Positions 29,953 to 64,000 of a stretch of 64,000 nucleotides of DNA are shown in pieces; positions within the stretch are counted from its first letter, which is position 1, and each line of letters opens with the position of its first letter. The notes under the pieces were generated by a model. The model had not been told where the DNA came from, did no database searches, and saw nothing but the letters and a program-made list of their open reading frames with translations. Location: positions 150,201 through 214,200 of IMG/VR virus record IMGVR_UViG_3300032931_001151; one strand, 5' to 3'. Made by a program: the position numbers and the translations under genes.

Positions 29953-29994
29953 AATGTCATATTAGTATAAATACTAGTAAAAGGAATTACTATT

Positions 29995-30837: not shown

Positions 30838-30859
30838 AAAATAAATAATTTTATTTATT

Positions 30860-30889: not shown

Positions 30890-30928
30890 TCTTTTTTGGA
30901 TATAGTATAGAGGTATATAGGAGATATT

Positions 30929-32809: not shown

Positions 32810-32864
32810 ACTACTTTTATTCTATGATTTTGGACTTACGATGTGGGTATAAGGAGTTTATAAA

Positions 32865-33638: not shown

Positions 33639-33648
33639 GAAATATAAT

Positions 33649-34548: not shown

Positions 34549-34555
34549 TAGTTTT

Positions 34556-35320: not shown

Positions 35321-35331
35321 TATAATAAATT

Positions 35332-35766: not shown

Positions 35767-35805
35767 ATAATGATTGATATAAAACCTTATAAGGATTGAA
35801 ATTAT

Positions 35806-36210
35806 ATGAATGATTTAGATATTATTAATAAGATTGGAATAAAAGTTCTTTTAAAGGCCGACTATCCGATAGTGTGTGAAACTCTTGAAAGAATTGGCAT
35901 AGTTAATAAAATCGAAAAAAAGATATTCCCAAGTTGCTATTGTATAAAATATCAAGACCAAGAAGGTAGTGAATGTTATAGAATATGCCACTTCAAGGAG
36001 ATGTTTTTGCTCCAAAATAAAGAATCAACTTTCAATGATCTTGACAAGGTTCGTAGAAATACAATTGGATATTTGCTTCAATCATGGAATCTAATTGAAG
36101 CACTTAATCCGGATGATATTGCAGATATTCTAAATAGAAAAATACCAGTTGTTCCTTACAAAGAAAAGAAAGACTATAGAATAATACATAAATTTAGAAA
36201 TATTCATTAA
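35806..36210 (+). CDS. regA: RegA translational repressor
   Basis: VCETLERIGI; SC; Y.I.HFKEMF; D..RRNTI..LL..WNLI; K..Y....K. Confidence 0.88.
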   Translation: MNDLDIINKIGIKVLLKADYPIVCETLERIGIVNKIEKKIFPSCYCIKYQDQEGSECYRICHFKEMFLLQNKESTFNDLDKVRRNTIGYLLQSWNLIEALNPDDIADILNRKIPVVPYKEKKDYRIIHKFRNIH

Positions 36211-36249
36211 TTCCGTTTTTCCAACAATTTAGTTGGATGTGAAAATATT

Positions 36250-38668: not shown

Positions 38669-38694
38669 TATAATATCCTTAATGGGAGGATATT

Positions 38695-40642: not shown

Positions 40643-41469
40643 TGATTAATACTATTATTTGGAGCAAAGATAGAGCTTGTCAATTAGATTTAACCCTTAA
40701 TACATATAAAAAATATTTTACCGAGTGGAAAGAACAACAAGTAAATATAATATATACTTATTCTAATCAGTTATATCATCAGGGATATGAAATAGTAAAG
40801 GCGAAACATCCGGAATTTAATTGGATAAAAGAGACTAACTTTAGACAAGACACTATAAATTGTTTTAATAAGTATAGAAGAACATATACATCTTTCGTCG
40901 TTGACGATGATGTGTTTATTGATTATTTTTCATTGAAGAGTGACGAATTTAGAATTTTTCAAAATGAGCCTAGCATAATATGTGTTAGTCCTAGAATGGC
41001 ACCATATGTTAATTATTGTTATCCTGCCAATTTAGATAGTCCACCCCCCCAGTTCCTATCTCAATACGATAAAAGGGTCTGGAATTGGAAATTGGGACAC
41101 CTCCGAGGGGATTGGGCATATGCCGCAAGTGTTGCTTGCCATCACATTTTTAGATCCGAAGACTTAGAGTATCCAATCAATAATATCCCATTTAAATTTG
41201 CTAATTCGTTTGAAGGTAATTGTTTACTTGGACATATTGATAATATAATTGGCCCTAAAAGACCCTATATGGTGTGCTTTGAAACATCTAAATGTATATG
41301 TTCGGAGAATAATAAGGTTCAAAACGAAAATCAAAATAGAAACGAGAATAGTCATCCCTTAGAATATATGAATGATATGTTGCTACAAGGAAAGAGATTA
41401 TGCCCTAATATAAACCATCAAGCAAGAATTAATGCTTGTCATGGCCCAGTACAAATCAAATGGATTTAA
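40642..41469 (+). CDS. Putative GT-A glycosyltransferase
   Basis: IIWSKDRACQL; VDDD. Confidence 0.55.
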   Translation: MINTIIWSKDRACQLDLTLNTYKKYFTEWKEQQVNIIYTYSNQLYHQGYEIVKAKHPEFNWIKETNFRQDTINCFNKYRRTYTSFVVDDDVFIDYFSLKSDEFRIFQNEPSIICVSPRMAPYVNYCYPANLDSPPPQFLSQYDKRVWNWKLGHLRGDWAYAASVACHHIFRSEDLEYPINNIPFKFANSFEGNCLLGHIDNIIGPKRPYMVCFETSKCICSENNKVQNENQNRNENSHPLEYMNDMLLQGKRLCPNINHQARINACHGPVQIKWI

Positions 41470-41479
41470 AGGAAAACAA

Positions 41480-42688
41480 ATGAAGTATCCTCTTGCTACC
41501 GAGTCTTGGGACGAAAAAGAAATCAATGCCGCATGCGAAGTTATAAAGTCCATGAAGTGTACTATGGGTGATAGATGCAAACAATTTGAGCAAGAGTTTG
41601 CTAAAATGTTCGGGAGTAAATATGCTATTTTTAGCAATTCGGGATCTTCCGCTAATTTATTAATGCTATCCGCATTAATGTATAGAAAAAATGGTCTAAA
41701 ATTAGAAATTGGAGATGAAGTAATAGTTCCTACAGTTTCTTGGAGTACTACTTATTACCCTATACATCAAAATGGATTAGCGTGTTGTTTTGTTGATATT
41801 GACAAAGACACGTTAAACATAGATTGTAATAAGATAGAAGCCGCTATTACTCCTAAAACAAAAGCTATATTAGCTGTAAATCTTTTAGGAAATCCTAACG
41901 ATTTTGATAGACTTAATGAAATATGTGTAAAGCACAATTTAATTTTACTTGAAGATAATTGTGAGTCTATGGGTGCTTTATACAAAGGAAAATATTGCGG
42001 ATCTATAGGACTAATGGGTTCTTTTAGTACGTTTTTTAGCCACCATATTAACTCAATTGAGGGCGGAATAACATTAACTAACGACGAAGAATTATATCAA
42101 ATAATGATCTCATTAAGAGCGCACGGATGGACACGAGGGTTGCCCAATAAGAATTTTGTTCATGATAAAGATGGTGTTGCTTTTAACGATTTATTTAGAT
42201 TCGTTTTACCGGGATATAATCTAAGACCAAATGAGGTATTTGCCGCTCTAGGTCTAGAACAACTAAAGAAGTTGCCCAAATTCATTGAAGATAGAATAAA
42301 AAATGCGGAATACTTTAATACAAGAATGGGTTATATTAAAAATAAATATCCAAACATGTTCACTACTCAATCCATTACTTTAAACTCAACCTCTTCTTGG
42401 TTTGGATTTGCTTTCGTTTTAGATTCGGAATTGAAAGGAAAGCGACTTGAAGTGGTTGAAGGGCTTACAATAGCTAATATTGATTGTAGACCAATCGTAG
42501 CAGGCAATTTCTGTAAGAACCCGGTCATTCAGCACATGAAAACGAGAATTAGTGGAAATACTAACTACGCAAATCATATAGATGAAAATGGGTTATTTAT
42601 TGGAAACAATCAAGGTAATATTAAAGATCAAATAGACCACTTTGCTAATACTTTTGATGCAATTATAGCAAGTATTCTTTCTAAATAG
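41480..42688 (+). CDS. colD: GDP-4-keto-6-deoxy-D-mannose 3-dehydratase (ColD, PLP-dependent)
   Basis: YPLA..SW; SGSSANLLM; VSWSTTYYP; VNLLGNP; LEDNCESMGA; FFSHH (His in place of the Schiff-base Lys); RAHGWTR; PGYN.RP. Confidence 0.88.
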   Translation: MKYPLATESWDEKEINAACEVIKSMKCTMGDRCKQFEQEFAKMFGSKYAIFSNSGSSANLLMLSALMYRKNGLKLEIGDEVIVPTVSWSTTYYPIHQNGLACCFVDIDKDTLNIDCNKIEAAITPKTKAILAVNLLGNPNDFDRLNEICVKHNLILLEDNCESMGALYKGKYCGSIGLMGSFSTFFSHHINSIEGGITLTNDEELYQIMISLRAHGWTRGLPNKNFVHDKDGVAFNDLFRFVLPGYNLRPNEVFAALGLEQLKKLPKFIEDRIKNAEYFNTRMGYIKNKYPNMFTTQSITLNSTSSWFGFAFVLDSELKGKRLEVVEGLTIANIDCRPIVAGNFCKNPVIQHMKTRISGNTNYANHIDENGLFIGNNQGNIKDQIDHFANTFDAIIASILSK

Positions 42689-42711
42689 TGAAACTATAGC
42701 AAGAATACTTG

Positions 42712-43551
42712 CTATTTAATTTTTTTGTATATTTTAACTAAATGAGCGAACGAGCTATTAGGATGATATATTCTAAAGTTAGTTCTTGCCAATAGTAGTA
42801 AATCAACAAAAGCATCTTCTACCGAATCGGTCGGTGTGTATACATTATTTGACCAACCGCCGTTTTGTTGTTTGGACACATATTTTTTATCAGATCTAAT
42901 AACAATATTTCTTTTATCTTTTTCTTTTATATATCGTTCATATTGAGGTGAATCCGAGCATACAAAGAAACTCCAGTTTGACATTACACTCATGCTATCC
43001 AAATAGTAATCGGCGTTTATTCCAGAATCTTCAAAGTCTGTACCTCTTGCATGAACGCCGATATAATCTTTATGTAAGTTAGCATTTTTCCAAAATTCAT
43101 CCACTTTATCAATAATATTTTTATTTATAGTAAGATAATATTGAAATATAGCCGTATGAGAGTCTATGCTTATATCGGGTAAGAATGTATTAGAGAATAC
43201 GACTAAATTTTCCGTTTTATCTTCGATTATTTTTTTGGTGTCAATTAAAGTACTACCATATTTTTTTATTAAGTCTCTCATCCCGGAAAGTTTGTTTAGA
43301 TTGTATTCATAATCACCCGCATCACTTGGACACCATACTTTAACATTAGATAGTAGTGATAGCTCCGATTCCTTTATGAATTTTATGTTTTTATTTGAAA
43401 ATAGGGATTCAAATGGTGCGAGACACCTTAAAGTTGGTTCCCATACTACTACAAGTTCTCTCCCGGTAAGATTAGCAATAACCCAACATGAAGCAATTGG
43501 CTTTAATCTATTCCCAATTCCCCCAGAACAATAACAAATTATACGACTCAT
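42712..43551 (-). CDS. Fucosyltransferase-like GT (GT11/GT23/NodZ-like)
   Basis: GGIGNRL; IGVHARGTD; FVCSDS; DLLLLA...SSF. Confidence 0.75.
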   Translation of the reverse strand: MSRIICYCSGGIGNRLKPIASCWVIANLTGRELVVVWEPTLRCLAPFESLFSNKNIKFIKESELSLLSNVKVWCPSDAGDYEYNLNKLSGMRDLIKKYGSTLIDTKKIIEDKTENLVVFSNTFLPDISIDSHTAIFQYYLTINKNIIDKVDEFWKNANLHKDYIGVHARGTDFEDSGINADYYLDSMSVMSNWSFFVCSDSPQYERYIKEKDKRNIVIRSDKKYVSKQQNGGWSNNVYTPTDSVEDAFVDLLLLARTNFRIYHPNSSFAHLVKIYKKIK

Positions 43552-44231
43552 ACATCTACCCAAGGCTTAGGTTGTCTAGGATCATGTCCCCATTTACTCA
43601 CAAATAACTCGGTGTTGTGTCCTATAATATTCCACGATCTATCATTATCCGCATAGTTTTTTCCTAAATGATATGTTAAAGTTCCTAGTTGTTGTGGTGC
43701 GGACTTTGTATATCCAAATTGTCTTAATGTTAATCCTATATCTTGATCTTCATGGCCATAGTGTCCGTTGTATCTTTCGTCATAATAACCAATTTCTTTT
43801 AACACATCATTTTTGAACCCTATATTAGCACACGAGAACCAAGCATTAGCATTAGCGAAATTATCAGAAGGAAATTGTATTATTCCTCTTGATATAGGAA
43901 AATTCTCTAATGAATGTAAGTGATTTTCAATAAATGTTTGAGATTGTGGAACACAATCGTCATCAAGAATTATGATATCCGGCGAATTACACATTTTCAT
44001 TGCTTCGTTTAGTCTTGCAACTTTAGTGTATCCCTCATCCTTAGCCCATAAATATCTTGAAACTATTCCGAATTTATTCGGATCAATCATATGGTGTGAT
44101 TTACTACCATCATCGGTAACTATTAAATTAAAATTGGTTATAGTTTGATACATCAATTTTTGCAAAGTTTGTTGTAAAAACTCGCTTCTATTATATGTAA
44201 CTATAATAATATCAACATCTTTAATTTTCAT
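43548..44231 (-). CDS. GT2 glycosyltransferase
   Basis: IIVTYNR; VTDDGS; LDDDC; YGHEDQD. Confidence 0.85.
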   Translation of the reverse strand: MKIKDVDIIIVTYNRSEFLQQTLQKLMYQTITNFNLIVTDDGSKSHHMIDPNKFGIVSRYLWAKDEGYTKVARLNEAMKMCNSPDIIILDDDCVPQSQTFIENHLHSLENFPISRGIIQFPSDNFANANAWFSCANIGFKNDVLKEIGYYDERYNGHYGHEDQDIGLTLRQFGYTKSAPQQLGTLTYHLGKNYADNDRSWNIIGHNTELFVSKWGHDPRQPKPWVDV

Positions 44232-44234
44232 ATT

Positions 44235-44936
44235 TCATTCCCAAAATACTTGGTTTTCTCTTTTTTTACCATAAGCGTCTACTATTAACGGAAAGCACAC
44301 TTCAAAAAAGTATCTATCTTTAAGATTCGTAGTGAAGAATTCTTCGGTGCTATTGTCTAAAAACCACTTTACTATTTTACCTTTTATAGCATAATGCGTT
44401 AATAACCACATAGTATTTGTTGGAATAGTTTCCGAATTTATGGGAATTTTCATATAAGAAGATATTACTTCTAAATTTTTACTAATTTTCATATCAAAAT
44501 TTCTTGCTATATGTGCCCAGCCACCAATTTCATCATTTTCAAGAATCTCATCATATTCTTTTCTCTTTTCAGCAAATTGCATAAAATAATCTCGGCATGA
44601 GATATACCATACACTATCTAGCGGATAGCTAATTCCTTTAGAATGCATAAAATATACATTTTCATAATCTTCTCTATTATCCTTCATCAATTTTAATGCC
44701 GATTGGAATCCGGATACATCGGAATTTACAGCTAAGTCGGGATCAACTAATGCGATATGAGCCTCTGGTAGTGTTGATTCAATTAAATCAATCCATGCTA
44801 AATCTGATTCGGCATTCACTCCAATATATACATCACAATCTCCAAAGTAATCTCTAATGTAACTTAAATATATTCCCGATCGATGTATAGTTGAATTTGG
44901 AATCCACGAAGAGAATACTACCGCATTTTTTTTCAT
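44235..44936 (-). CDS. Hypothetical, possibly GT-like
   Basis: YFMHSKG motif; embedded in the GT operon. Confidence 0.45.
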   Translation of the reverse strand: MKKNAVVFSSWIPNSTIHRSGIYLSYIRDYFGDCDVYIGVNAESDLAWIDLIESTLPEAHIALVDPDLAVNSDVSGFQSALKLMKDNREDYENVYFMHSKGISYPLDSVWYISCRDYFMQFAEKRKEYDEILENDEIGGWAHIARNFDMKISKNLEVISSYMKIPINSETIPTNTMWLLTHYAIKGKIVKWFLDNSTEEFFTTNLKDRYFFEVCFPLIVDAYGKKRENQVFWE

Positions 44937-44964
44937 TTTTTTAATCCTTTAATAATATTATACA

Positions 44965-46320
44965 CTAAAATCCTATTTTTTCATTAGGAGAAAATGGAAA
45001 ATTATTTATATTTAAATAGTTACCTATTACCGATTTGTATTGACTATTCTTAAGTGTATGTGTTATATTTAAGAATTCTTGAACAACTTCAGTATCAAGA
45101 AAAGGATATCTTCCTTCTTGTGAATAACTTCCCGTAACAAATTCGTCTTTTTTAAGATATGAGCACATACTACTACTATAAAACGACGCCCAAATAGGTT
45201 TATTATTTAGTTTCGTTGGAAATATAGTTTCTAAATTCTCGGGAAATACTCCTAGGAAATTTGAATGTTGGTATTTTGATGAGCCGTTCCAAGCATAATC
45301 TGAAAATAATTCATCCGCTCCCGCTCCGCTCATAAAGACTTTTCTATCATCTAATTTTGCTTTTGAACATACATAAGAAAGGCCATTAGACCCATTATCA
45401 TCCCATAAAGATAGATATGATTCCGAATAATTAGATCTCGCTGAATAAATTGTGTATTTAAACTCTTCGGTGTTGTCTAATAGATATTGGTGTGCCATAT
45501 TTCGCATACTAGGGGTTATAGTTAAAACTTCTAATTCGCAATTTGGATAGGACGTTAATATATTATATCTTTTATCTAATATCTCTTTATTTTCCGACCC
45601 TATTACACTAAATGCTTTAAATTTCGCCCCTTGCTTAATCATCTCACATATTAATGCTCCGCTATCATATCCACTTGACATTCCGATAAATAATTTTTGC
45701 GACATGTTTTGACAAGAACGTTTTTTTATACTATTTGAGAATGCTTTATTCCAATCATCAAAGTTTGTTTTATATTGATCTAAATTGAAGTCATAAATAG
45801 TTTTGGTTTCATAAATCCCGGTTAACATATCAAAAATAAGTGTAGTATTAGCATCAAACATCTTTATATTGCTATAAGTTTCTTCAAGCCCACTTTTATA
45901 TGACGCCACTCCTATATCTTTACCTTCTATGGCATACCATAACGGCTTCGTGCAAAAAACATCCCCCGTTACTATTAATATATTATTTTTAAAATCGGCC
46001 AATACTATTGCGAATTCTCCATCAAGCTTTTTTACAAAATCATTTCCATATTTTTTATAAAGCGGAATAATACATTTAGTATCATTATCATAGTCCCCAA
46101 ATTCTTTAAAGTTATATATCTCTCCATTAAAGATAATTACTATATCATCATCAACTAATGGTTGTGGAGTAAAAGTTCCGGTAATGCTTAGTAAATTATG
46201 AAGAAAAGTACATCCTTTATAATCTATAATATTAGTGGAATCCGGTCCACGCAATTTCATAAATCTATTTCTATGATCTATATTATCAATATTTTTTGTT
46301 GAAAATAGGATACTACACAT
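44965..46320 (-). CDS. AsnB-type glutamine amidotransferase
   Basis: N-terminal MC; RGPD; FNGEIYN; SSGYDS; SGAGADELF; RYPFLD. Confidence 0.88.
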   Translation of the reverse strand: MCSILFSTKNIDNIDHRNRFMKLRGPDSTNIIDYKGCTFLHNLLSITGTFTPQPLVDDDIVIIFNGEIYNFKEFGDYDNDTKCIIPLYKKYGNDFVKKLDGEFAIVLADFKNNILIVTGDVFCTKPLWYAIEGKDIGVASYKSGLEETYSNIKMFDANTTLIFDMLTGIYETKTIYDFNLDQYKTNFDDWNKAFSNSIKKRSCQNMSQKLFIGMSSGYDSGALICEMIKQGAKFKAFSVIGSENKEILDKRYNILTSYPNCELEVLTITPSMRNMAHQYLLDNTEEFKYTIYSARSNYSESYLSLWDDNGSNGLSYVCSKAKLDDRKVFMSGAGADELFSDYAWNGSSKYQHSNFLGVFPENLETIFPTKLNNKPIWASFYSSSMCSYLKKDEFVTGSYSQEGRYPFLDTEVVQEFLNITHTLKNSQYKSVIGNYLNINNFPFSPNEKIGF

Positions 46321-55654: not shown

Positions 55655-55963
55655 TTGAAAACACTCACTGATCAATATAAATGTTACTTTTGTGAATTAC
55701 AAGAACCTATTAATGTATCTAAAACTAATAATTTTAGAAGGCTCATAGAAAAGCACCATATTATAGAAAAAAACCAAAATGGAAATAATGATGCTAATAA
55801 TTTAGTTCCAGTATGCTCTAATTGTCACTCAAAGATACATCTAGGACTTATTAATCCAAAAATGTGGCTATTTACTACTAGCGGTTGGAAATTGCTTTGG
55901 AAAGATTCTAAGAATATAGAGTATCTCGGAAGAGATAAAATTTCTATAAATAGTCATATATAG
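55655..55963 (+). CDS. HNH endonuclease
   Basis: CYFC; EKHHI; N.ANNL..VCSNCHSKIH; TTG start and no clear SD. Confidence 0.7.
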   Translation: MKTLTDQYKCYFCELQEPINVSKTNNFRRLIEKHHIIEKNQNGNNDANNLVPVCSNCHSKIHLGLINPKMWLFTTSGWKLLWKDSKNIEYLGRDKISINSHI

Positions 55964-57700: not shown

Positions 57701-57751
57701 GAAAGAGAAGAAAAAAGAAATCAATATAAATAACACTAAAGGATATAAATC

Positions 57752-57868
57752 ATGACCACTCAAACTAACATTAAGCTTCGCTCGGATAGCAAGCCCTTAT
57801 CATGGGATTCCCATAGTATGTTAGTGTCCCTCTTTAGCATTATGCCAAGCAAGGGACTCCTAGGTTAA
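57752..57868 (+). CDS. 38-aa attenuator leader peptide (8 Ser)
   Basis: AAAGGA SD; MTTQTNIKLRSDSKPLSWDSHSMLVSLFSIMPSKGLLG; stop lies in the 5' arm of the antiterminator. Confidence 0.75.
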   Translation: MTTQTNIKLRSDSKPLSWDSHSMLVSLFSIMPSKGLLG

Positions 57869-57922
57869 GATTCGGACACATCCGATAACTCTTAAACCTA
57901 GGGCCAAAACCCTAGGTTTTTT
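57859..57922 (+). promoter_or_regulatory. Mutually exclusive antiterminator/terminator
   Basis: CCTAGGTTAAGA(57859-70) pairs with TCTTAAACCTAGG(57890-902); AAACCTAGGG(57894-903)-ccaaaa-CCCTAGGTTT plus U-tract. Confidence 0.8.
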
Positions 57923-57979
57923 CGTATTTGACAACTATATAATTGTAGAATAGAAGACATACTCTTTGAGTGTGTCTAT

Positions 57980-58070
57980 GGAGTAGACAATAGGAAAAGT
58001 TCCTAGAGAGTTTGCTAAACTCATCGTGCCTTTTATTAGGCATTCAGTGCGAATCTGAGCTACTCCACCA
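57980..58070 (+). tRNA. tRNA-Ser(GCT), atypical D-arm
   Basis: GGAGTAG/CTACTCC acceptor; loop TT-GCT-AA; long variable arm; CCA. Confidence 0.8.
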
Positions 58071-58072
58071 AT

Positions 58073-58150
58073 GGGCAAAAGTCTAGCTGGTATGCTAGTA
58101 AACGTCTGATAAGCGTTTTTAGGTGAGTTCGATTCTCACTTTGCCCACCA
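58073..58150 (+). tRNA. tRNA-Ile(GAT)
   Basis: GGGCAAA/TTTGCCC; CT-GAT-AA; TTCGATT; CCA. Confidence 0.85.
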
Positions 58151-58218
58151 TTCCCTTTAATAGAGTTGGAGTTGAAACTATTTTAGCTGAGGTTAAGCTA
58201 ATTAAAACCTCAAGTCAT

Positions 58219-58294
58219 CAGGCCGTAGTGTTTAACAGTAGCATGGCTCGTTTGGGGCGAGGTGGAGGGAGTGCAAATCTCCCCGGCTTGACCA
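58219..58294 (+). tRNA. tRNA-Pro(TGG)
   Basis: CAGGCCG/CGGCTTG; TT-TGG-GG; CCA. Confidence 0.85.
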
Positions 58295-58309
58295 TTTTTA
58301 GTAATTCAT

Positions 58310-58383
58310 ACCGATGTAGCATAAGTAGCAAATGCGAAAGATTGTCGATCTTTAGATAGTGGGTGCAAGTCCCATCATCGGTG
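58310..58383 (+). tRNA. tRNA-Asp(GTC), CCA not encoded
   Basis: ACCGATG/CATCGGT; AAAGA-TTGTCGA-TCTTT. Confidence 0.85.
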
Positions 58384-58444
58384 CTTTTATTAACAATAGA
58401 ATTAATATATGATATAATGTACTTTCACTATTAGAAAGGATTAT

Positions 58445-58714
58445 ATGAAAGATTCAAAATATGGCATATTTCAAGAATATATAAGATGCTATAGAGATAT
58501 ACTCATTTATATAAAAAAGTATGAACATGATAGCGATGAAATCACTAAGGATAGATTTGAAAGTAAAAGGTTAAAATTAATAGATATGGAAGAAAACGAA
58601 TCGTTTATTGTTAATATTCTATCTATATTAGAAATGCCTAGCACACAAGATATTTGTATTACGAGTAGTTTCCCAAGTAATATTTTGAAATGCACTACAT
58701 ATAATAAAAATTAA
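58445..58714 (+). CDS. Hypothetical protein in the tRNA array
   Basis: AAAGGA SD. Confidence 0.55.
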   Translation: MKDSKYGIFQEYIRCYRDILIYIKKYEHDSDEITKDRFESKRLKLIDMEENESFIVNILSILEMPSTQDICITSSFPSNILKCTTYNKN

Positions 58715-58730
58715 TTTATATAGAATTTAT

Positions 58731-58805
58731 GCCGGGGTCGTATATGAGGTAATACGCAAGTCTGAAGAACTTGATCAACGGATTCGAGCGCCGTCCCCGG
58801 CACCA
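58731..58805 (+). tRNA. tRNA-Phe(GAA)
   Basis: GCCGGGG/CCCCGGC; CT-GAA-GA; CCA. Confidence 0.85.
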
Positions 58806-58850
58806 TTTACATAGGGTTACAACTCCCATAGTTAAAAGTTGAAACTTTGT

Positions 58851-58927
58851 GGGTTGCAAGCATAAATGGAAGGATGCCATCGATTCTTAATCGATAGAGT
58901 AGGGTTCGAATCCCTAGCGACCCACCA
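58851..58927 (+). tRNA. tRNA-Lys(CTT)
   Basis: GGGTTGC/GCGACCC; TT-CTT-AA; TTCGAAT; CCA. Confidence 0.9.
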
Positions 58928-58930
58928 CAT

Positions 58931-59019
58931 GGATTAGGCAATTGCAGGAGATGCAACATTGTTTGGAAAACAATTGGGGCCTTTACGGGCCTTTGGAGCG
59001 TAACCAAGCTAATCCGCCA
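58931..59019 (+). tRNA. tRNA-Ser(GGA), atypical D- and T-arms
   Basis: GGATTAG/CTAATCC; ATTGT-TTGGAAA-ACAAT; long variable arm; G73; CCA. Confidence 0.75.
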
Positions 59020-59024
59020 TTTTT

Positions 59025-59114
59025 GGAAATACGGGAACATAGTTGTTCAAATAGTTTCGAAAACTATCCTTGGTCTTAATTGGCCTAACCGTGCGATTCG
59101 GTGTATTTCCTCCA
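59025..59114 (+). tRNA. tRNA-Ser(CGA), 8/4 acceptor/T-stem fold
   Basis: GGAAATAC/GTATTTCC 8 bp; ACCG/CGGT T-stem; TT-CGA-AA; CCA. Confidence 0.75.
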
Positions 59115-59148
59115 ACTTCGTGATATAATAAATAGTACGAGAGGCAAT

Positions 59149-59937
59149 ATGAATATAACAATTGATCACGATAACGATGGTTTTGGCGCACAAATGATGG
59201 GTATTATATCTGCTATAGCATATGCAAAATTTCATGAACATACTTATTATCACACACCAAGAAAAAATATAAAATTGGTTGGGATAGAAGAACCTCAGAA
59301 TGCGGAGATTGATAAAATTAATGAGTTTTTAAACACATTTATGAAAAATTTGGGAATAAATTTAATGCCATCTGAAATTTTACTTGACGGAGAGGGTAAA
59401 CCAAAATTTACATGTGAAGTTAGGCCACATTTTCATGACGAAATATATTACAACGGATCAAACTATTATACGAAAGAATTTAATACATATCTAAGACAAA
59501 ATTATCCACTTACTAAACCTAACTATTATGAAAATATGCATAATATAGCAATTCACATTAGAAGGGGATCTGATATAGATTCACCATCGCAACGGCATAA
59601 TAGATGGATTGATTCAAACGTTTATAATTGTCTTATAGACTTAATACACGTAAAATATCCAAATAGTATTATACATGTATTTTCTTGGGGTGATCCAGAA
59701 ATAGAGATAAAACCGTTCATAGTATTTCATTCATCAAATAGTGGTTCAACATTTTTAGATGACTATAATGCATTAGTTTGGGCCGACATATTGGTAGTGG
59801 GGTCAAGTACTTTTAGTCTTTCTGCCGCTCTTATAAACAATAATAAAATAATAATTGATGGGGCATTTTATAAATTAAATGGTATGTACATACCAAATGA
59901 ATGGATGCAAAATTTTAAAGAATTTTATGTAATGTGA
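59149..59937 (+). CDS. GT11-like (alpha-1,2-fucosyl/colitosyl-transferase-like) glycosyltransferase
   Basis: DGFGAQ; IAIHIRRGSD; ADIL..G.STFS; true start after the tRNA-Ser(CGA). Confidence 0.75.
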   Translation: MNITIDHDNDGFGAQMMGIISAIAYAKFHEHTYYHTPRKNIKLVGIEEPQNAEIDKINEFLNTFMKNLGINLMPSEILLDGEGKPKFTCEVRPHFHDEIYYNGSNYYTKEFNTYLRQNYPLTKPNYYENMHNIAIHIRRGSDIDSPSQRHNRWIDSNVYNCLIDLIHVKYPNSIIHVFSWGDPEIEIKPFIVFHSSNSGSTFLDDYNALVWADILVVGSSTFSLSAALINNNKIIIDGAFYKLNGMYIPNEWMQNFKEFYVM

Positions 59938-59986
59938 AATATTATAGAATAAAGAATTATTCTAAAGATTATGAAAAAATTAAAAT

Positions 59987-60078
59987 GGATCGGTGAGTGA
60001 GCGGTCAAAACTAGAAATTTACTAAATTTCCGATCCCAGAAATGGGGTCCGTAGGTTCGAATCCTACCCGATCCGCCA
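59987..60078 (+). tRNA. tRNA-Ser(ACT)
   Basis: GGATCGG/CCGATCC; GAAAT-TTACTAA-ATTTC; long variable arm; G73; CCA. Confidence 0.85.
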
Positions 60079-60081
60079 TAT

Positions 60082-60174
60082 GGAGAGAACAACCGAGAAT
60101 AGTTTTCGGCACTGATTTGAAATCAGAGGGTTCCGTGCAAACGGGATAAGGTGCGATACCTTGGCTCTCCACCA
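60082..60174 (+). tRNA. tRNA-Ser(TGA), extended D-stem
   Basis: GGAGAG/CTCTCC; CTGA-TTTGAAA-TCAG; long variable arm; CCA. Confidence 0.75.
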
Positions 60175-60176
60175 TC

Positions 60177-60204
60177 TTGACAATATATTAAAATATGCTA
60201 TAAT
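60177..60204 (+). promoter_or_regulatory. Sigma70 promoter with extended -10 directly upstream of the suppressor tRNA
   Basis: TTGACA-16 nt-TATAAT with TG extension. Confidence 0.75.
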
Positions 60205-60214
60205 GAACTCACAT

Positions 60215-60286
60215 GGGTCATTGACCGAGTGGCACAGGTGATGGGTTCTAAACCCATTTAGAAGTGTTCAAATCACTTATGACTCA
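60215..60286 (+). tRNA. Amber suppressor tRNA (anticodon CTA)
   Basis: GGGTCAT/ATGACTC; ATGGG-TT-CTA-AA-CCCAT; AAGTG-TTCAAAT-CACTT; A73; followed by CAA, not CCA. Confidence 0.8.
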
Positions 60287-60319
60287 CAATTATAAATAAA
60301 CACTAGCAAAGGAGCTAAT

Positions 60320-60430
60320 ATGATTGCTTAGAAGAAATTAGAATATGGGTAGGTAGGTTGTCGTGGACCTCCTATTTGTTATTGGTTGAATAATCTCAAA
60401 TTAACACCAATAACAAGGAATATAATATGA
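60320..60430 (+). promoter_or_regulatory. Leader ORF with two in-frame UAG codons, coupled to the downstream gene
   Basis: AAAGGAG SD; MIA*KKLEYG*VGCRGPPICYWLNNLKLTPITRNII-TGA; TGA overlaps ATG 60427; hairpin 60376-60416 abuts and covers the downstream SD. Confidence 0.7.
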
Positions 60431-60855
60431 ATAAAAAAGAATTGATTGCTAAGATTAAAGAAGAAATTAAAGTCACTTCCGAGATCCTTAGAATAAATAA
60501 AAAGACTCACAAACAAAACCAAAGAATGTATTCACAAGGCACAAGACCTTTTGAGTTAATTCAACTTTATCCGTTTGATGTGGAAAAGGTAACACCTTTT
60601 AATCATAATTATGTAAAAGTAATTGATGGAAAACATTATTGGAACTATAGTTACAACGAAACTCCATGCAATGCGGGCATTGAGTCGGCAAAGTGCCACT
60701 TGACTTGTCTACATATTGTGTATAATATGCTTCGTACAAAAAAGACGCATTGCCACAACATTGAAAGGAATGATTATTATGTTAAATATTTTGATAAGCT
60801 CATACAAGGATATCTTAGCCAAGTGGAAGAGGAACAAAATGTTGTCGTATCCTGA
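60427..60855 (+). CDS. Hypothetical protein preceding the PTH2-like gene
   Basis: AAGGA SD; LHIVYNMLR motif. Confidence 0.65.
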   Translation: MNKKELIAKIKEEIKVTSEILRINKKTHKQNQRMYSQGTRPFELIQLYPFDVEKVTPFNHNYVKVIDGKHYWNYSYNETPCNAGIESAKCHLTCLHIVYNMLRTKKTHCHNIERNDYYVKYFDKLIQGYLSQVEEEQNVVVS

Positions 60856-61210
60856 ACCACCATCTTTAGAAGAAGCACTAAAACAAGTTAGAATGTATGT
60901 TTTAGTAAGAAGGGAAATTTTACCTTTAGTCCATTGTGTTTGTCAATGTACACATGCGGTAGCCGAATTTATTCATTATCATCAAAATGATAATACTAAA
61001 TTATGGGTTACATGTGAAAAAACTTTAATTGTTTTAGAAGCGACGGAAGACCAAATAAAAGAAAAAATGATTTGGTTTGCTGACCGTCATATGAATTATC
61101 AACCTTTTTGTGAACCGGATATGAATAATGTTCTAACGGCGGTTGCGTTTCAACCAATTACAAAACAAATTGGTAATGAAGTTTTTGGTAACTTAAAGCT
61201 TCTAAAATAA
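60839..61210 (+). CDS. Peptidyl-tRNA hydrolase, PTH2-like phage family
   Basis: YVLVRR; Q..HAVAEF; W.....LIVL; F.EPDM...LTAVA. Confidence 0.7.
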   Translation: MLSYPEPPSLEEALKQVRMYVLVRREILPLVHCVCQCTHAVAEFIHYHQNDNTKLWVTCEKTLIVLEATEDQIKEKMIWFADRHMNYQPFCEPDMNNVLTAVAFQPITKQIGNEVFGNLKLLK

Positions 61211-61223
61211 TATTTAAAAATGA

Positions 61224-61262
61224 CCCGTCCAAGTATAAATAAGTTTATAACACTTGGACGGG
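61224..61262 (+). promoter_or_regulatory. 11-bp hairpin enclosing a late promoter and sequestering the SD of the endonuclease gene
   Basis: CCCGTCCAAGT...ACTTGGACGGG; TATAAATA 61234-61241; ATG 61271. Confidence 0.8.
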
Positions 61263-61270
61263 ACACTATT

Positions 61271-61897
61271 ATGAATGAAAATGTACTTAGAAAAGATAAA
61301 CAAAAATTACATCTTATTAAAAAATTAAGATGTATTATGGATCATGGCGGAAAATGTAAACATTGTGGAAAGGATTTAATAATAAACCACTACGATGCAG
61401 ATTTTCATCATATAGACCCTTCGATTAAAGAAGTTGTGGGGCATTCTTTAATGAATGGGCATTATTACAAAATAAAAAAAGAAGTTGATAAGTGTATTTT
61501 ATTATGTGGATCGTGTCATAGGTATGAACATTGTAAATGGAAAGATTGGATTAATCACAAAGAAGAATTACTTTCTTTAGCAAAAAATATTCATAATAGG
61601 AGAACCATAGAAGATACACAACAACGTATTAAAAAAATTAAAGAATTATATTTAAGCGGTAATGGTATAAGACAAATAGCAAAAATATTAGGAATACCTG
61701 TATCCTCTGTTGGATATACAATTAAGAAATTGGGTATAGGTAGACCATTTATTACTAAAGTGTCTAATGAAGAATTGATAGAATGTTTTAAGCAAGGAAT
61801 GACAGCAAGTGAGGTTTCAAAAAAATATAATTGTTGTTATGCAAACTGTTGTAGAAAACATAAAAAATGGAGAAATAAAAAAAGTAAGCTGCTATAG
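61271..61897 (+). CDS. HNH-type homing endonuclease with C-terminal HTH domains
   Basis: CKHCG; DFHHID; CILLCGSCHRYEH; GIRQIAKILG. Confidence 0.8.
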   Translation: MNENVLRKDKQKLHLIKKLRCIMDHGGKCKHCGKDLIINHYDADFHHIDPSIKEVVGHSLMNGHYYKIKKEVDKCILLCGSCHRYEHCKWKDWINHKEELLSLAKNIHNRRTIEDTQQRIKKIKELYLSGNGIRQIAKILGIPVSSVGYTIKKLGIGRPFITKVSNEELIECFKQGMTASEVSKKYNCCYANCCRKHKKWRNKKSKLL

Positions 61898-61961
61898 TAT
61901 AATGGTATTATGCGATCTTGGTATGATTGAGACGGAAGTTCGATTCTTCCTGGCAGCACCA
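61888..61961 (+). tRNA. tRNA-Thr(GGT)
   Basis: GCTGCTA/TGGCAGC; TT-GGT-AT; CCA; overlaps the endonuclease stop. Confidence 0.85.
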
Positions 61962-62027
61962 TTCAAGTTACACTTTTTTCTAAGAGTTTTGTGTTTCCAA
62001 GCAAGCAAACGAAAAAACTTAGTGCAT

Positions 62028-62101
62028 ACAGTAATAGTATAACGGAATTATTTTCCACTCCAAACGGAAAGATCGTGGTCCGACTCCACGTTACTGTGCC
62101 A
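62028..62101 (+). tRNA. tRNA-Trp(CCA)
   Basis: ACAGTAA/TTACTGT; CT-CCA-AA; CCA end. Confidence 0.75.
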
Positions 62102-62106
62102 ATCAT

Positions 62107-62182
62107 ATCCGTTTAGCTCATTAGGAAGAGTTTCTTGGTCCTAACAAGAAGGTAGTAGGTTCGAATCCTACAACGGATGCCA
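62107..62182 (+). tRNA. tRNA-Arg(CCT)
   Basis: ATCCGTT/AACGGAT; GT-CCT-AA; CCA. Confidence 0.85.
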
Positions 62183-62193
62183 AAATTTAGTAT

Positions 62194-62267
62194 ACCCGGT
62201 TCATCTAATGGAAGGATATAAAACTACGAATTTTATCATTTAGGTTCGAATCCTAAGCCGGGTGCCA
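62194..62267 (+). tRNA. tRNA-Arg(ACG)
   Basis: ACCCGGT/GCCGGGT; CT-ACG-AA; CCA. Confidence 0.9.
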
Positions 62268-62270
62268 TTT

Positions 62271-62393
62271 CTCTAGATGCATTAAAGGATTACACCAAAC
62301 AGTGGATTGTAGGTTCAACTCCTACCAAGTGAAAGCTTGTAGCTTAATTGGCAAAGCAACCGTCAAAAACATCTTTTAAACTTTTTGCTAGAG
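62271..62393 (+). ncRNA. Circularly permuted tRNA-like RNA (T-arm, loop-closed acceptor stem, D-arm); Y-RNA/YrlA-like architecture
   Basis: GTAGG-TTCAACT-CCTAC; CAAGT-GAAA-GCTTG; TA-GCTT-AATTGGCA-AAGC. Confidence 0.65.
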
Positions 62394-62405
62394 AATCTTT
62401 TTCAT

Positions 62406-62495
62406 GCGGATGTGTTGGAATTGGCAGACATCATAGTTTTAGACACTATGGCGAAATTAAGTAGCGTGCAGGTTCAACTCCTGTCGTCCGCACCA
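62406..62495 (+). tRNA. tRNA-Leu(TAG)
   Basis: GCGGATG/CGTCCGC; TT-TAG-AC; long variable arm; CCA. Confidence 0.9.
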
Positions 62496-62499
62496 AATT

Positions 62500-62636
62500 G
62501 TTGTCGTGTAGCTCAGTGGTTAGAGCGAATTTTTGAGGAAACGAGAAATTGTTTCTAGGTCGCAAATAGTGACCGTTCAAAATTGTGCGGGTAAAAATGT
62601 CTTTAGTGACATGGTTCGATTCCCCCTACGACAACA
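62500..62636 (+). ncRNA. tRNA-like RNA with a branched insert replacing the anticodon loop
   Basis: GTTGTCGT/ACGACAAC; canonical D-arm GCTCAGTGGTTAGAGC; TTCGATT T-loop; no 7-nt anticodon loop. Confidence 0.6.
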
Positions 62637-62646
62637 TCTTTTTCAA

Positions 62647-62732
62647 GCGTCTATGGAGAAATAGAAGACTCGTGAGACTAAGAATCTCATTCCGTAAATG
62701 GAGTACAAGTGCAAGTCTTGTTAGGCGCACCA
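62647..62732 (+). tRNA. tRNA-Leu(AAG)
   Basis: GCGTCTA/TAGGCGC; TGAGA-CTAAGAA-TCTCA; CCA. Confidence 0.85.
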
Positions 62733-62747
62733 TTTTGTAAAATCCAC

Positions 62748-62835
62748 GGGGGCGTGGTGAAATAGAAAACACACAACGCTTAAAACGTTGCGGATAGAAA
62801 TATCCTTGCAGGTGCAAGTCCTGTCGCCCCTACCA
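62748..62835 (+). tRNA. tRNA-Leu(TAA)
   Basis: GGGGGCG/CGCCCCT; CT-TAA-AA; CCA. Confidence 0.9.
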
Positions 62836-62840
62836 ATTAC

Positions 62841-62914
62841 GCCGATTTAGTATAGTGACATTACAATTGATTCGTATCCAATAAACGATGGTTTAATTCC
62901 ATCAATCGGCACCA
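62841..62914 (+). tRNA. tRNA-Thr(CGT)
   Basis: GCCGATT/AATCGGC; TT-CGT-AT; T-loop TTTAATT; CCA. Confidence 0.75.
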
Positions 62915-62915
62915 G

Positions 62916-63344
62916 TTATTCGTGAAATAGTTTCTTTACTTTATTCGTAAGTTCAACATTTTCTACTAATTTAGGAATGACCATTCCAAATTCTCTACCT
63001 TTAGTTTTAATATAAGGAAATGCAATCATAAGAATATCGAGTAACTCTCTATATTTTCTAAAGTTTTCTATAAATTGTTTTTTATCTTTTATCTCTTTTA
63101 TGTTGTTTAAATTGGACAATAAAGAAATAAAACAAACTAAATCATCGTTATTCTTAAAGTGATCTAATGATATATTGGTAGAGTTGGTTAAATCGTCGTC
63201 AATTTGTGATTTTGAGGGTACTAATGGTTCTATTTTTTTAGGAGTTGGTCTTGACTTCCATTTATCAAAAAAACCTTCAATTAATTGTAAATCTTCTGTT
63301 AAACTTGATAAATCTTCATTTAATTCTTGTTGTTCTAATGGCAT
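62916..63344 (-). CDS. Late hypothetical protein (MPLEQQELNE...)
   Basis: AGGGGAG SD; TATAAATA 63364-63371 (-). Confidence 0.65.
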   Translation of the reverse strand: MPLEQQELNEDLSSLTEDLQLIEGFFDKWKSRPTPKKIEPLVPSKSQIDDDLTNSTNISLDHFKNNDDLVCFISLLSNLNNIKEIKDKKQFIENFRKYRELLDILMIAFPYIKTKGREFGMVIPKLVENVELTNKVKKLFHE

Positions 63345-63408
63345 AATGACTCCCCTATTGACATATTTATAATGAGGACTATAATAAATATAAGAAAAGG
63401 GGTATAAA

Positions 63409-63639
63409 ATGAGTACTCTAGAACTCTTAAATAATGAAGACCTAGATTGCCTAGATGGTATGCTCATCTTTGGCATGAATGGGGATATTAATCGGTATAA
63501 CGTGTGTAAACTTAAGGTTGATGAATATTTAGTGGAAGAAGCCATTAAGGAATATGGATTAAAAGATGCTTTAAAAGAAAAAGTAATTACCCAAAAAGAG
63601 GCTAACGAGTATCTTGAAAAGCATAAGTTTGTTGCATAA
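63409..63639 (+). CDS. Hypothetical protein
   Basis: AAGGGG SD. Confidence 0.55.
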   Translation: MSTLELLNNEDLDCLDGMLIFGMNGDINRYNVCKLKVDEYLVEEAIKEYGLKDALKEKVITQKEANEYLEKHKFVA

Positions 63640-63640
63640 T

Positions 63641-63714
63641 GGGCGTTTAGTTTAATGGAAAAACATCTCTTTTACACGGAGAATTCGGGGGTTCGATTCC
63701 CTCAATGCCTACCA
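63641..63714 (+). tRNA. tRNA-Val(TAC)
   Basis: GGGCGTT/AATGCCT; TT-TAC-AC; CCA. Confidence 0.9.
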
Positions 63715-63718
63715 ATAT

Positions 63719-63804
63719 GCGGAGTGAAGTCCAATGGCCGGACATCAGATTGTGGCTCTGAGTGCGAAAGCACATTGCGGGTTCGAATCCCGTCACTTCG
63801 CCCA
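63719..63804 (+). tRNA. tRNA-His(GTG) with long variable arm
   Basis: G-1:C73; TCAGA-TTGTGGC-TCTGA; GTGC-GAAA-GCAC extra arm; CCA. Confidence 0.85.
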
Positions 63805-63809
63805 TTTAC

Positions 63810-63885
63810 GGTGGATTAGTTATTCGGCAATAACAGTAGTATCATAAACTACACAAAAAGGGTTCGACTCCCTTATCCACTACCA
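63810..63885 (+). tRNA. tRNA-Met or Ile2 (CAT)
   Basis: GGTGGAT/ATCCACT; AT-CAT-AA; CCA. Confidence 0.8.
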
Positions 63886-63937
63886 ATTTTCTATTCTACA
63901 ATTCCCCTATTATAAATAAGTTAATAAGGGGCTTTCA

Positions 63938-64000
63938 ATGAACTTTAAGCAATTTTATAAAGAAGGTTTAGTCCGTACTCCTACGGACGATATTCGTAAA
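63938..64000 (+). CDS. Partial late ORF (MNFKQFYKEG...)
   Basis: TATAAATA 63911-63918; AAGGGG SD. Confidence 0.55.
   Translation, partial: MNFKQFYKEGLVRTPTDDIRK

What the first reader, a model, noticed from the sequence alone, without database searches (positions are those of the whole stretch)
60215..60286. Amber suppressor tRNA in a phage that is not TAG-recoded
Seen: a well-formed cloverleaf with CTA anticodon, short variable loop, A73 and its own promoter. All large genes are intact under code 11 and few end in TAG (e.g. gp4, RmlC-D, ColD, with another stop within about 15 codons). Established: amber suppressors usually accompany code-15 phages. Inference: regulatory rather than recoding use, or an early stage of recoding. 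The charged amino acid cannot be assigned by eye.
Basis: partly seen in the sequence, partly recalled or inferred. Interest (0 to 1): 0.6.

Follow-up and report, generated by a model that had tools for sequence, protein, structure and literature searches.

The report
Orphan amber-suppressor tRNA in standard-code phage
A well-formed tRNA gene that reads the UAG stop codon, with its own strong promoter, sits in the tRNA cluster of a large T4-like phage that uses the ordinary genetic code; such orphan suppressors are already known from other big phages, so it is real but not a new kind of thing.

Summary
Window 60215-60286 (+) is a canonical 72-nt tRNA with anticodon CUA (ARAGORN; Rfam tRNA 51.9 bits, E 2.8e-9). 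A perfect TTGACA-16-TGnTATAAT promoter lies 10 nt upstream, and a hairpin plus U-run lies downstream.

The genome is a 214-kb T4-like myovirus with at least 29 tRNAs. It is not TAG-recoded:
- Code 11 gives 94.9% ORF coverage, against 93.6% with TAG read as sense.
- No homology match to two relatives crosses a TAG.
- TAG ends 14 of 223 ORFs, the same share as in relatives that lack the tRNA.
- The nearby back-up stops are only the AT-rich background.

No dedicated read-through target was found, and the phage has no release factor or matching synthetase. The tRNA body is tRNA-Cys-like: its 19-nt D-arm is identical to tRNA-Cys genes elsewhere. It has lost both Cys determinants (A73 instead of U73, CUA instead of GCA), so the inserted residue stays open; Lys or Gln are the likeliest.

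One suggestive datum: a sibling genome from another sample differs at 1 of 18,028 bases, and that change turns Lys codon 51 (AAG) of an HNH gene 1.1 kb downstream into TAG.

Standard-code jumbo phages with CUA suppressors and no targets are published (XacN1), as is the "suppressor first, recoding later" model. This is a new member of a known kind.

The parts
60177..60204 (+). Perfect sigma-70-type promoter (TTGACA, 16-nt spacer, TG-extended TATAAT). It ends 10 nt before the tRNA 5' end.
   Evidence: 12/12 match, TG present; 11 perfect sites in the genome against 0.54 in shuffles.
60215..60286 (+). tRNA gene with anticodon CUA (reads UAG). 72 nt up to discriminator A73, no encoded CCA, tRNA-Cys-like body.
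   Evidence: D-arm matches to tRNA-Cys genes. Identical copy in a second sample.
60349..60385 (+). Terminator-like hairpin (60349-60375) followed by a U-rich run. Together with the promoter it makes the tRNA a stand-alone transcription unit (inferred).
   Evidence: Folds (local fold about -13.6 kcal/mol). The consensus terminator scan did not list it, so this part is weak.
61370..61372 (+). Codon 51 (AAG, Lys) of the HNH endonuclease gene 61220-61897. It is TAG in the sibling contig L078. This is the only difference in 18,028 compared bases.
   Evidence: Allele distribution across samples.

Best explanation
This is an intact, independently transcribed amber-suppressor tRNA gene in the accessory tRNA island of a lytic T4-like jumbo phage that uses the standard code.

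Proposed mechanism:
1. Host RNA polymerase transcribes the gene from a consensus sigma-70 promoter. Promoter shown; early expression inferred.
2. RNase P trims a leader of a few nucleotides, and a CCA-adding enzyme adds the missing CCA. The phage encodes such an enzyme; its use here is inferred.
3. A host synthetase charges the tRNA. This step is inferred and the residue is unknown. Lys or Gln are the likeliest, because U35 is kept, the discriminator is A73 and both Cys determinants are gone.
4. The charged tRNA competes with release factor 1 at UAG and gives partial, untargeted read-through.

The phage tolerates this because only about 6-7% of its genes stop at TAG, and the AT-rich DNA supplies another stop within a few to a few dozen codons. 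The likely pay-off is not a programmed extension. It is buffering of amber nonsense mutations, plus some collateral read-through of host genes. This is the 'suppressor first' state from which TAG recoding can start. The gene arose from a tRNA-Cys-type body by changes at positions 34, 35 and 73.
For: Structure:
- tRNA quality and universal residues are intact.
- It has a dedicated perfect promoter of a class that is 20-fold enriched in this genome, and a downstream hairpin.
- An identical copy exists in an independent sample.
- The phage encodes a CCA-adding enzyme, and a PTH2 peptidyl-tRNA hydrolase 550 bp downstream.

Standard code:
- ORF coverage is 94.9% under code 11 against 93.6% with TAG as sense.
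- No clean homology match crosses a TAG.
- No release factor, Gln/GluRS, Lys-type, CysRS or PylS gene was found, so host enzymes must do the charging.

Buffering:
- The only SNP between two environmental genomes (1 in 18,028 bp) is AAG to TAG in a gene 1.1 kb downstream. A random SNP has a 1.3% chance of making an in-frame TAG.

Origin:
- The 19-nt D-arm is identical in four tRNA-Cys(GCA) genes in metagenomic arrays, and in a Pedobacter tRNA whose family homologues are tRNA-Cys.

Precedent:
- PMC5852040, PMC6102473, PMC8386662 and 10.1101/2021.08.26.457843.
Against: - There is no expression, processing or aminoacylation evidence.
- Both major CysRS determinants are lost and no positive identity set for another synthetase is complete, so the tRNA may be poorly charged.
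- No CUA tRNA was found in the tRNA clusters, located by an Rfam scan, of the four long relatives that have tRNAs. The gene is therefore young or dispensable.
- TAG usage and back-up stops show no adaptation to a suppressor.
- The TAG allele is a single change in a homing-endonuclease gene. Such genes often decay anyway. It is seen in one assembly only and could be an assembly or consensus artefact.
- The two copies are nearly identical genomes, so their identity says nothing about selection.
Confidence: 0.55

Rival explanations
1. Inactive or barely active relic. A tRNA-Cys-type gene mutated in its anticodon and discriminator and is no longer charged by any synthetase. It is carried neutrally in a fast-turning accessory island, or acts only as a non-translating decoy.
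For: - Both Cys determinants are changed.
- It is one of only 2 of 18 tRNAs without an encoded CCA.
- No counterpart was found in the tRNA clusters of four relatives.
- None of the neighbouring protein genes has a homologue in relatives G001 and G002, so the island is highly variable.
- There is no adaptation of TAG usage.
Against: - All universal tertiary-interaction residues and all stems are intact, and the Rfam score is above most sister tRNAs.
- It has one of the 11 perfect promoters of the genome, which a dead gene would not be expected to keep.
- From established E. coli work, recalled and not tested here: CUA tRNAs that lack strong determinants are readily charged with Gln or Lys.
Confidence: 0.22
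2. Programmed regulatory read-through. The tRNA exists to extend one or a few specific TAG-terminated phage proteins, or to couple their expression to the time of tRNA synthesis.
For: - One pair of ORFs (genome 116288-116716 and 116039-116278, minus strand) is in frame across a single TAG and would fuse into 225 aa.
- A 36-codon ORF with a Shine-Dalgarno site and two TAGs lies just after the tRNA and overlaps the next start codon.
Against: - The fused product has no family match and no homologue in relatives. Being in frame has a 1 in 3 chance, and that TAG overlaps the downstream ribosome-binding site.
- The mini-ORF DNA is better explained by the hairpin.
- All other extensions are 0-38 codons, no shorter or longer than after TAA/TGA. 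Two TAG stops are followed directly by TGA.
- TAG-ending genes are mostly mobile endonucleases and sugar-pathway genes, not one module.
Confidence: 0.08
3. Weapon or counter-defence aimed at the host. Read-through of host UAG-terminated genes, or replacement or decoy for a tRNA attacked by a host anticodon nuclease, helps take-over.
For: - Early-type consensus promoter.
- A peptidyl-tRNA hydrolase gene is next to it.
- Authors of other standard-code phages with suppressors have raised this idea (PMC8386662, PMC6102473).
Against: - The host is unknown, so its UAG usage could not be examined.
- Nothing in the sequence links the tRNA to a defence system.
- No close tRNA homologue was found among 301 Bacteroidota genomes sampled.
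Confidence: 0.1
4. The genome is in fact TAG-recoded, wholly or in a late-gene block, and this is an ordinary code-15 tRNA.
For: Low GC (32.8%) and rare TAG stops are the background from which recoding arises, according to Borges et al.
Against: - Coverage per 10 kb is as high or higher under code 11 everywhere except the non-coding tRNA island.
- Zero clean homology matches cross a TAG.
- Structural genes (capsid, portal, sheath, terminase, baseplate) are intact under code 11.
- Only about 90% of the genome is in hand.
Confidence: 0.02

Closest known systems
CUA suppressor tRNAs of Xanthomonas jumbo phage XacN1 (PMC5852040)
   Same: Both are standard-code jumbo myoviruses with a very large tRNA set. 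Each carries a CUA-anticodon tRNA inside the tRNA cluster and has few amber stops (18 there, 17 here). In-silico read-through finds no targets in either.
   Different: No sequence relationship beyond the general tRNA fold (alignment). XacN1 has two tandem copies with encoded CCA. This phage has one copy, without CCA, with its own promoter and on a tRNA-Cys-like body.
Suppressor tRNAs of TAG-recoded (code 15) phages: crAss-like, Lak and others (10.1101/2021.08.26.457843, PMC9523058)
   Same: Phage-encoded CUA tRNA in a low-GC genome with rare TAG stops. It is presumed to be charged by a host synthetase.
   Different: Those genomes have many in-frame TAGs in structural and lysis genes, read as Gln, and some carry RF2. 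Here there are no sense TAGs and no release factor, and the tRNA lacks the Gln features (G73, weak 1-72 pair, 5-nt variable loop).
Standard-code relatives of recoded phages that have gained a suppressor (Agate phage example in Borges et al.); opal or ochre suppressor-like tRNAs in Atu_ph07 and phiKp24 (PMC6102473, PMC8386662)
   Same: A suppressor tRNA without recoding. It is interpreted as a possible first step, or as nonsense buffering or host interference.
   Different: Those examples read other stop codons (TGA, TAA). No sibling genome with a new in-frame stop was reported there, as far as I read.
Bacterial and phage tRNA-Cys(GCA)
   Same: Identical 19-nt stretch covering positions 8-26, a purine13.A22 mismatch, a 4-nt variable loop and 72 nt length.
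   Different: Anticodon CUA instead of GCA, A73 instead of the U73 seen in all compared tRNA-Cys, G48 instead of C48, and unrelated acceptor and T stems.
Laboratory amber suppressors (E. coli supE/supF, T4 psu1+)
   Same: A sense tRNA turned into a UAG reader by anticodon change. It rescues amber mutants.
   Different: Those arise by one base change and keep the parent identity. Here at least three identity positions differ from the nearest body type, and the gene is natural with a dedicated promoter. This comparison rests on my own knowledge.

Membership tests
tRNA (Rfam RF00005) | Cloverleaf with conserved tertiary residues, scoring above the family's gathering threshold (29 bits) | tested here: met
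   51.9 bits, E 2.8e-9, full-length match. ARAGORN call. U8, A14, G18 G19, U33, A37, G53, U54 U55 C56, A58 and C61 read from the sequence.
Amber suppressor tRNA | Anticodon CUA at positions 34-36 of a 7-nt loop | tested here: met
   The loop is UUCUAAA.
Amber suppressor tRNA | Is expressed, aminoacylated and inserts a residue at UAG | not testable with these tools
Only a promoter and a phage CCA-adding enzyme argue for expression.
Code-15 (TAG to Gln) recoding system of phages | In-frame TAG codons inside conserved genes, and higher coding density when TAG is read as sense | tested here: not met
   Coverage 94.9% (code 11) against 93.6%. Zero clean homology matches cross a TAG. Structural genes are intact.
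Code-15 (TAG to Gln) recoding system of phages | Accessory code-change genes (release factor 2, synthetase). These are frequent, not obligatory. | tested here: not met
   No RF-1 domain, no tRNA-synt_1c, tRNA-synt_2 or tRNA-synt_1e, and no PylS in the 214 kb.
tRNA-Pyl | One nucleotide between acceptor and D stems, a small D loop without G18 G19, a 3-nt variable loop, an atypical T loop, and pylS in the genome | tested here: not met
   Two nucleotides (U8 G9), G18 G19 present, a normal UUCAAAU T loop and a 4-nt variable loop. No PylS. The feature list is from my own knowledge.
tRNA-Cys | Body: 3-bp D stem with a 13.22 mismatch and a 4-nt variable loop | tested here: met
   The 19-nt D-arm is identical to four tRNA-Cys(GCA) genes, and 15 of 17 D-arm bases are shared with Sphingobacteriaceae tRNA-Cys.
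tRNA-Cys | Identity set: U73 discriminator and GCA anticodon | tested here: not met
   A73 and CUA. All compared tRNA-Cys have T at 73 and GCA. It is therefore not filed as tRNA-Cys.
tRNA-Gln-derived suppressor (supE-like, the usual phage case) | G73, weak U1-A72 pair, G2-C71, G10, 5-nt variable loop (E. coli rules, from my own knowledge) | tested here: not met
   A73, G1-C72, G2.U71, A10 and a 4-nt variable loop. No similarity to tRNA-Gln of relatives or of XacN1. Mischarging by GlnRS through C34 U35 is not excluded.
tRNA-Lys-derived suppressor | A73 plus U35, and similarity to tRNA-Lys | tested here: inconclusive
   A73 and U35 are present. The best pairwise match among 104 phage tRNAs is the phage's own tRNA-Lys(CUU), but only 49 of 73 positions. 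The sibling's TAG replaces a Lys codon, n = 1.

The most novel reading that the evidence does not exclude
The suppressor is active, and this phage population has been caught at the very first step of stop-codon capture. With the tRNA in place, an AAG-to-TAG change in a nearby gene has reached consensus in one environmental population. The tRNA is a re-identified tRNA-Cys body, possibly charged with Lys, which would restore the original residue. That would be a non-Gln route to TAG reassignment in a phage.
Probability: 0.12. Interest if true: 0.65.

Novelty: new member of a known kind. Interest (0 to 1): 0.3.

Why it matters
Orphan suppressor tRNAs in standard-code phages are the proposed starting point of stop-codon reassignment, but their activity and inserted residue have hardly been tested. 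This example offers three things:
- a compact unit of about 210 bp (promoter, tRNA, hairpin) that could go straight into an amber-reporter assay;
- an unusual parentage, a tRNA-Cys body that has lost its Cys identity marks;
- a natural pair of near-identical genomes, one with a new in-frame TAG next door.

If the tRNA is active, the pair gives a direct handle on how sense TAGs begin to accumulate. If it is inactive, it warns against reading every CUA tRNA in a phage as a sign of recoding.

Tried and rejected
Expression

Searches for related copies of the tRNA
- blastn against 50,697 reference phages gave nothing meaningful.
- Exact 22-mer and 37-mer scans of viral and metagenome contigs gave no hits. 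The window's own records may be left out of these scans.
- A Cys-body-plus-CUA pattern in viral contigs gave no hits.
- blastn of the tRNA against 301 Bacteroidota genomes gave only chance hits outside tRNA genes.

Relatives
- The tRNA clusters of four long relatives (G001, G002, G004, G005) hold 86 tRNAs and no CUA. A fifth, G003, has no tRNA hit.

Hidden recoding
- Reading TAG as Gln was used only as a diagnostic. The genome gives no support for it.
- All TAG-crossing alignments were shadow-frame artefacts, or ran into stops in the subject.

Read-through targets
- The in-frame ORF pair at genome 116 kb has no family or homologue.
- The RuvC-like gene's apparent extension is spurious.

Other
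- An HDV-like 'theta' ribozyme next to the tRNA (idea from PMC10879173): no Rfam hit at E <= 1 in 57800-64000.
- More SNPs from sibling contigs: a second contig was 100% identical, and a third was hidden by the tool as a duplicate place.
- The genome search could not open the L078 record, so the last 9.4 kb of that contig, which might hold tRNA-Gln or tRNA-Tyr, was not seen.
- The host could not be identified.

Full report
**1. Is it there?**

Yes. ARAGORN finds 18 tRNA genes, all on the + strand between 58073 and 63885. One of them, at 60215-60287, has anticodon CTA. Rfam's default filters missed it. The sensitive run scores it 51.9 bits against the tRNA model (threshold 29, E 2.8e-9, full length), better than 11 of the other 16 tRNAs detected.

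Read directly from the sequence:
- a 7-bp acceptor stem with one G.U (G2.U71), then U8 and G9;
- a 3-bp D stem closed by G13.A22, with G18 G19 in the D loop;
- a 5-bp anticodon stem, extendable by G26.U44, and the loop UUCUAAA;
- a 4-nt variable loop and the T loop UUCAAAU;
- discriminator A73.

Every universal tertiary-contact residue is present. The gene does not encode CCA, whereas 16 of the 18 tRNAs do. The phage encodes a CCA-adding-type nucleotidyltransferase (PF01743, 81 bits, genome 23652-24833, minus strand).

**2. Transcription signals**

A 12/12 match to TTGACA-16 nt-TATAAT, with TG before the -10, lies at 60177-60204 and ends 10 nt before the tRNA. Perfect sites of this kind occur 11 times in the genome, against 0.54 expected in block shuffles (maximum 4). 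They are therefore a real promoter class of this phage, and one of them serves this single tRNA.

Downstream, 60349-60375 folds into a bulged hairpin followed by a U-rich run. The consensus terminator scan did not list it, so I rate it as plausible only.

**3. What genome is this?**

The window is the last 64 kb of a 214,200-bp IMG/VR record (GC 32.8%, estimated 90% complete). The record is cut from a 217,484-bp JGI contig.

Major head protein (Gp23 family), T4-type portal, sheath, large terminase and baseplate proteins identify a T4-like myovirus. The nearest cultured capsids are cyanomyoviruses at about 35% identity. IMG/VR holds 26 relatives with 56-66% capsid identity.

A second contig from another sample (L078) overlaps window 57727-64000 and runs 9.6 kb further. 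With it the tRNA count reaches 29, and no tRNA-Gln or tRNA-Tyr is seen.

**4. Is the genome recoded?**

No. A greedy ORF cover gives these figures:

| Reading | ORF coverage |
|---|---|
| Code 11 | 94.9% |
| TAG as sense | 93.6% |
| TGA as sense | 92.9% |

- Per 10 kb, code 11 is as good or better everywhere except the last 4 kb, which is mostly tRNA genes.
- I translated every stop-to-stop frame that contains a TAG and searched it against two whole relatives (G001, 332 kb; G002, 263 kb). Only shadow-frame matches appeared. After matches with stops in the subject were removed, none crossed a TAG.
- TAG ends 14 of 223 ORFs of 80 aa or more (17 of 250 at 60 aa or more). In the two relatives without a CUA tRNA the figure is 55 of 672 (Fisher p = 0.39).
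- The distance from a TAG stop to the next TAA or TGA has a median of 15.5 codons, against 9 after TAA/TGA stops (p = 0.60).

There is no footprint of adaptation to a suppressor.

TAG-ending genes include two HNH endonucleases, a TnsA-like endonuclease, a RuvC-like gene, an RmlD-like gene, a DegT-type aminotransferase and a possible fucosyltransferase. They are mostly accessory or mobile genes, not one regulatory module.

**5. Read-through targets**

Extensions are 0-38 codons, with one exception. At genome 116288 a 142-aa ORF is in frame with the next 79-aa ORF. The fused product matches no family and has no homologue in the relatives, and that TAG overlaps the downstream ribosome-binding site. 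I treat it as chance.

A 36-codon ORF with two TAGs directly after the tRNA occupies the same DNA as the hairpin and is untestable.

**6. Code-change helpers**

- No release-factor domain, Gln/GluRS, class II Lys/Asp/Asn-type synthetase, CysRS or PylS gene is present. Charging must be done by a host enzyme.
- A PTH2-family peptidyl-tRNA hydrolase gene (30.1 bits, cut-off 23) lies at 60839-61210.
- None of the protein genes of this island has a homologue in G001 or G002.
- The tRNA clusters of four relatives, fetched after an Rfam scan, hold 86 tRNAs and no CUA. The island is a fast-changing accessory region, and the suppressor is a recent gain.

**7. Which amino acid?**

Unresolved, but the parentage is clearer than before. 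Among 104 tRNAs of this phage and its relatives, nothing is close. The best is the phage's own tRNA-Lys(CUU) at 49 of 73 positions, followed by a tRNA-Cys.

The 19 bases covering positions 8-26 gave these results:
- In 596 Gb of prokaryote genomes there is one in-register exact hit. It is a Pedobacter tRNA with anticodon GAU. Its homologues found in the family genomes sampled are tRNA-Cys(GCA) wherever ARAGORN calls a tRNA (9 of the 10 loci).
- In metagenomes there are five exact hits, and four of them are tRNA-Cys(GCA) genes in dense tRNA arrays.

The body (D arm, 13.22 mismatch, 4-nt variable loop, 72 nt) is therefore of the tRNA-Cys type. The two features that define Cys identity are changed: U73, present in all compared tRNA-Cys, is A here, and GCA is CUA. 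Position 48 is G, which gives a G15/G48 pair.

The following rests on established E. coli work, which I recall and did not test:
- CysRS depends on U73.
- GlnRS prefers G73, a weak 1-72 pair and G10, none of which is present.
- LysRS uses U35 and A73, both of which are present.
- CUA tRNAs without strong determinants tend to receive Gln or Lys.

My ranking is Lys, then Gln, then Glu, Cys or none. The tRNA is not Pyl-like and is unrelated to the XacN1 suppressors.

**8. The sibling genome**

L078 (sample 3300058131) is identical to the window at 6,273 of 6,274 positions and carries the identical tRNA. A second contig of that sample is identical over 11,754 bp.

The single difference is window 61370, A to T. 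It turns codon 51 (AAG, Lys) of the HNH endonuclease gene 61220-61897 into TAG. The gene caller there splits the gene into 50 and 153 aa. The AAG allele is on contigs from sample 3300032931 and on a contig recorded in two samples (3300059473); the TAG allele is in one sample.

Of all possible single-base changes in this genome, 1.3% create an in-frame TAG and 5.2% create any stop. This is what a buffering suppressor would allow, and Lys is the residue replaced. But it is one post hoc event in a gene class that often decays, and it is known only from an assembly consensus.

**9. Comparison with the literature**

- XacN1 is a standard-code jumbo myovirus with two CUA suppressors among 56 tRNAs and 18 amber stops. 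In-silico read-through found nothing (PMC5852040).
- Atu_ph07 has a UCA suppressor (PMC6102473).
- phiKp24 has a TTA suppressor. Its authors discuss nonsense rescue and host interference (PMC8386662).
- Borges et al. tabulate suppressors by genome code. They show a standard-code phage that gained a suppressor and propose this order: low GC, rare stop codon, suppressor gain, then sense use (10.1101/2021.08.26.457843).

The present case fits that picture as a further member. Its particular features are the dedicated consensus promoter, the tRNA-Cys-type body stripped of Cys identity, and the sibling TAG.

**10. Verdict**

The best explanation is an active but untargeted, host-charged suppressor (confidence 0.55). 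The main rival is an uncharged relic (0.22). Novelty: new member of a known kind. Interest: 0.3.

Noticed in passing
window 60081-60176 (+): A five-arm, tRNA-like cloverleaf ending in ACCA lies between tRNA-Ser(ACU) and the suppressor's promoter (MFE -33.4 kcal/mol, z = -3.4). ARAGORN and Rfam do not call it. It is most like tRNA-Ser(UGA) of relative G002 (60 of 90 positions) but has non-canonical D and T loops. It may be a degenerate or unconventional tRNA-Ser.
   Followed up: partly
window 60839-61210 (+): PTH2-family peptidyl-tRNA hydrolase gene (Pfam 30.1 bits against a cut-off of 23; phrog_3668) inside the tRNA island, 550 bp after the suppressor. No homologue in relatives G001 or G002.
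   Followed up: partly
window 62270-62397 (+) and 62502-62634 (+): Two sub-threshold RNA hits between tRNA genes: YrlA (Y RNA-like) at 35.4 bits (threshold 69), and a 133-nt stretch matching the tRNA model end to end at 24 bits, which could be an intron-containing or broken tRNA.
   Followed up: no
window 59987-60078 (+); L037:3192-3282; L040:5249-5338: A tRNA-Ser with the unusual anticodon ACU (A34) is conserved in this phage and in relatives G001 and G002.
   Followed up: no
L040:2249-2324 (relative G002): ARAGORN calls a UCA-anticodon (opal-suppressor-like) tRNA in a relative that also uses the standard code (no clean TGA-crossing homology). Its anticodon loop lacks U33, so it is doubtful.
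   Followed up: partly
L085:2604-2675 (-), Pedobacter sp. SYP-B3415: A tRNA-Cys-type body carrying anticodon GAU (Ile). Homologues in the family genomes sampled are ordinary tRNA-Cys(GCA). This is a second case of this body type with a changed anticodon.
   Followed up: partly
window 61888-61897: The HNH endonuclease gene ends with a TAG that lies inside the first bases of tRNA-Thr(GGU). Homing-type endonuclease genes (also 55655-55963) are interspersed in the tRNA island.
   Followed up: no
window 63720-63804 (+); L078:11702-11787: Unusually long tRNAs: tRNA-His of 85 nt, and tRNA-Cys of 86 nt with a long extra arm. The latter is shared with relative G002.
   Followed up: no
whole record and L078:6279-15917: IMG/VR labels the record 'provirus', but it is a T4-like lytic-type genome trimmed from a 217-kb contig. 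The genome continues past the window's end for at least 9.6 kb, with 11 more tRNA genes.
   Followed up: partly
window 28654-46320: A block of sugar-nucleotide and glycosyltransferase genes (epimerase/RmlD-like, DegT aminotransferase, NodZ-like, GT2) is interleaved with replication genes. Several of them end in TAG, which may reflect foreign origin.
   Followed up: no
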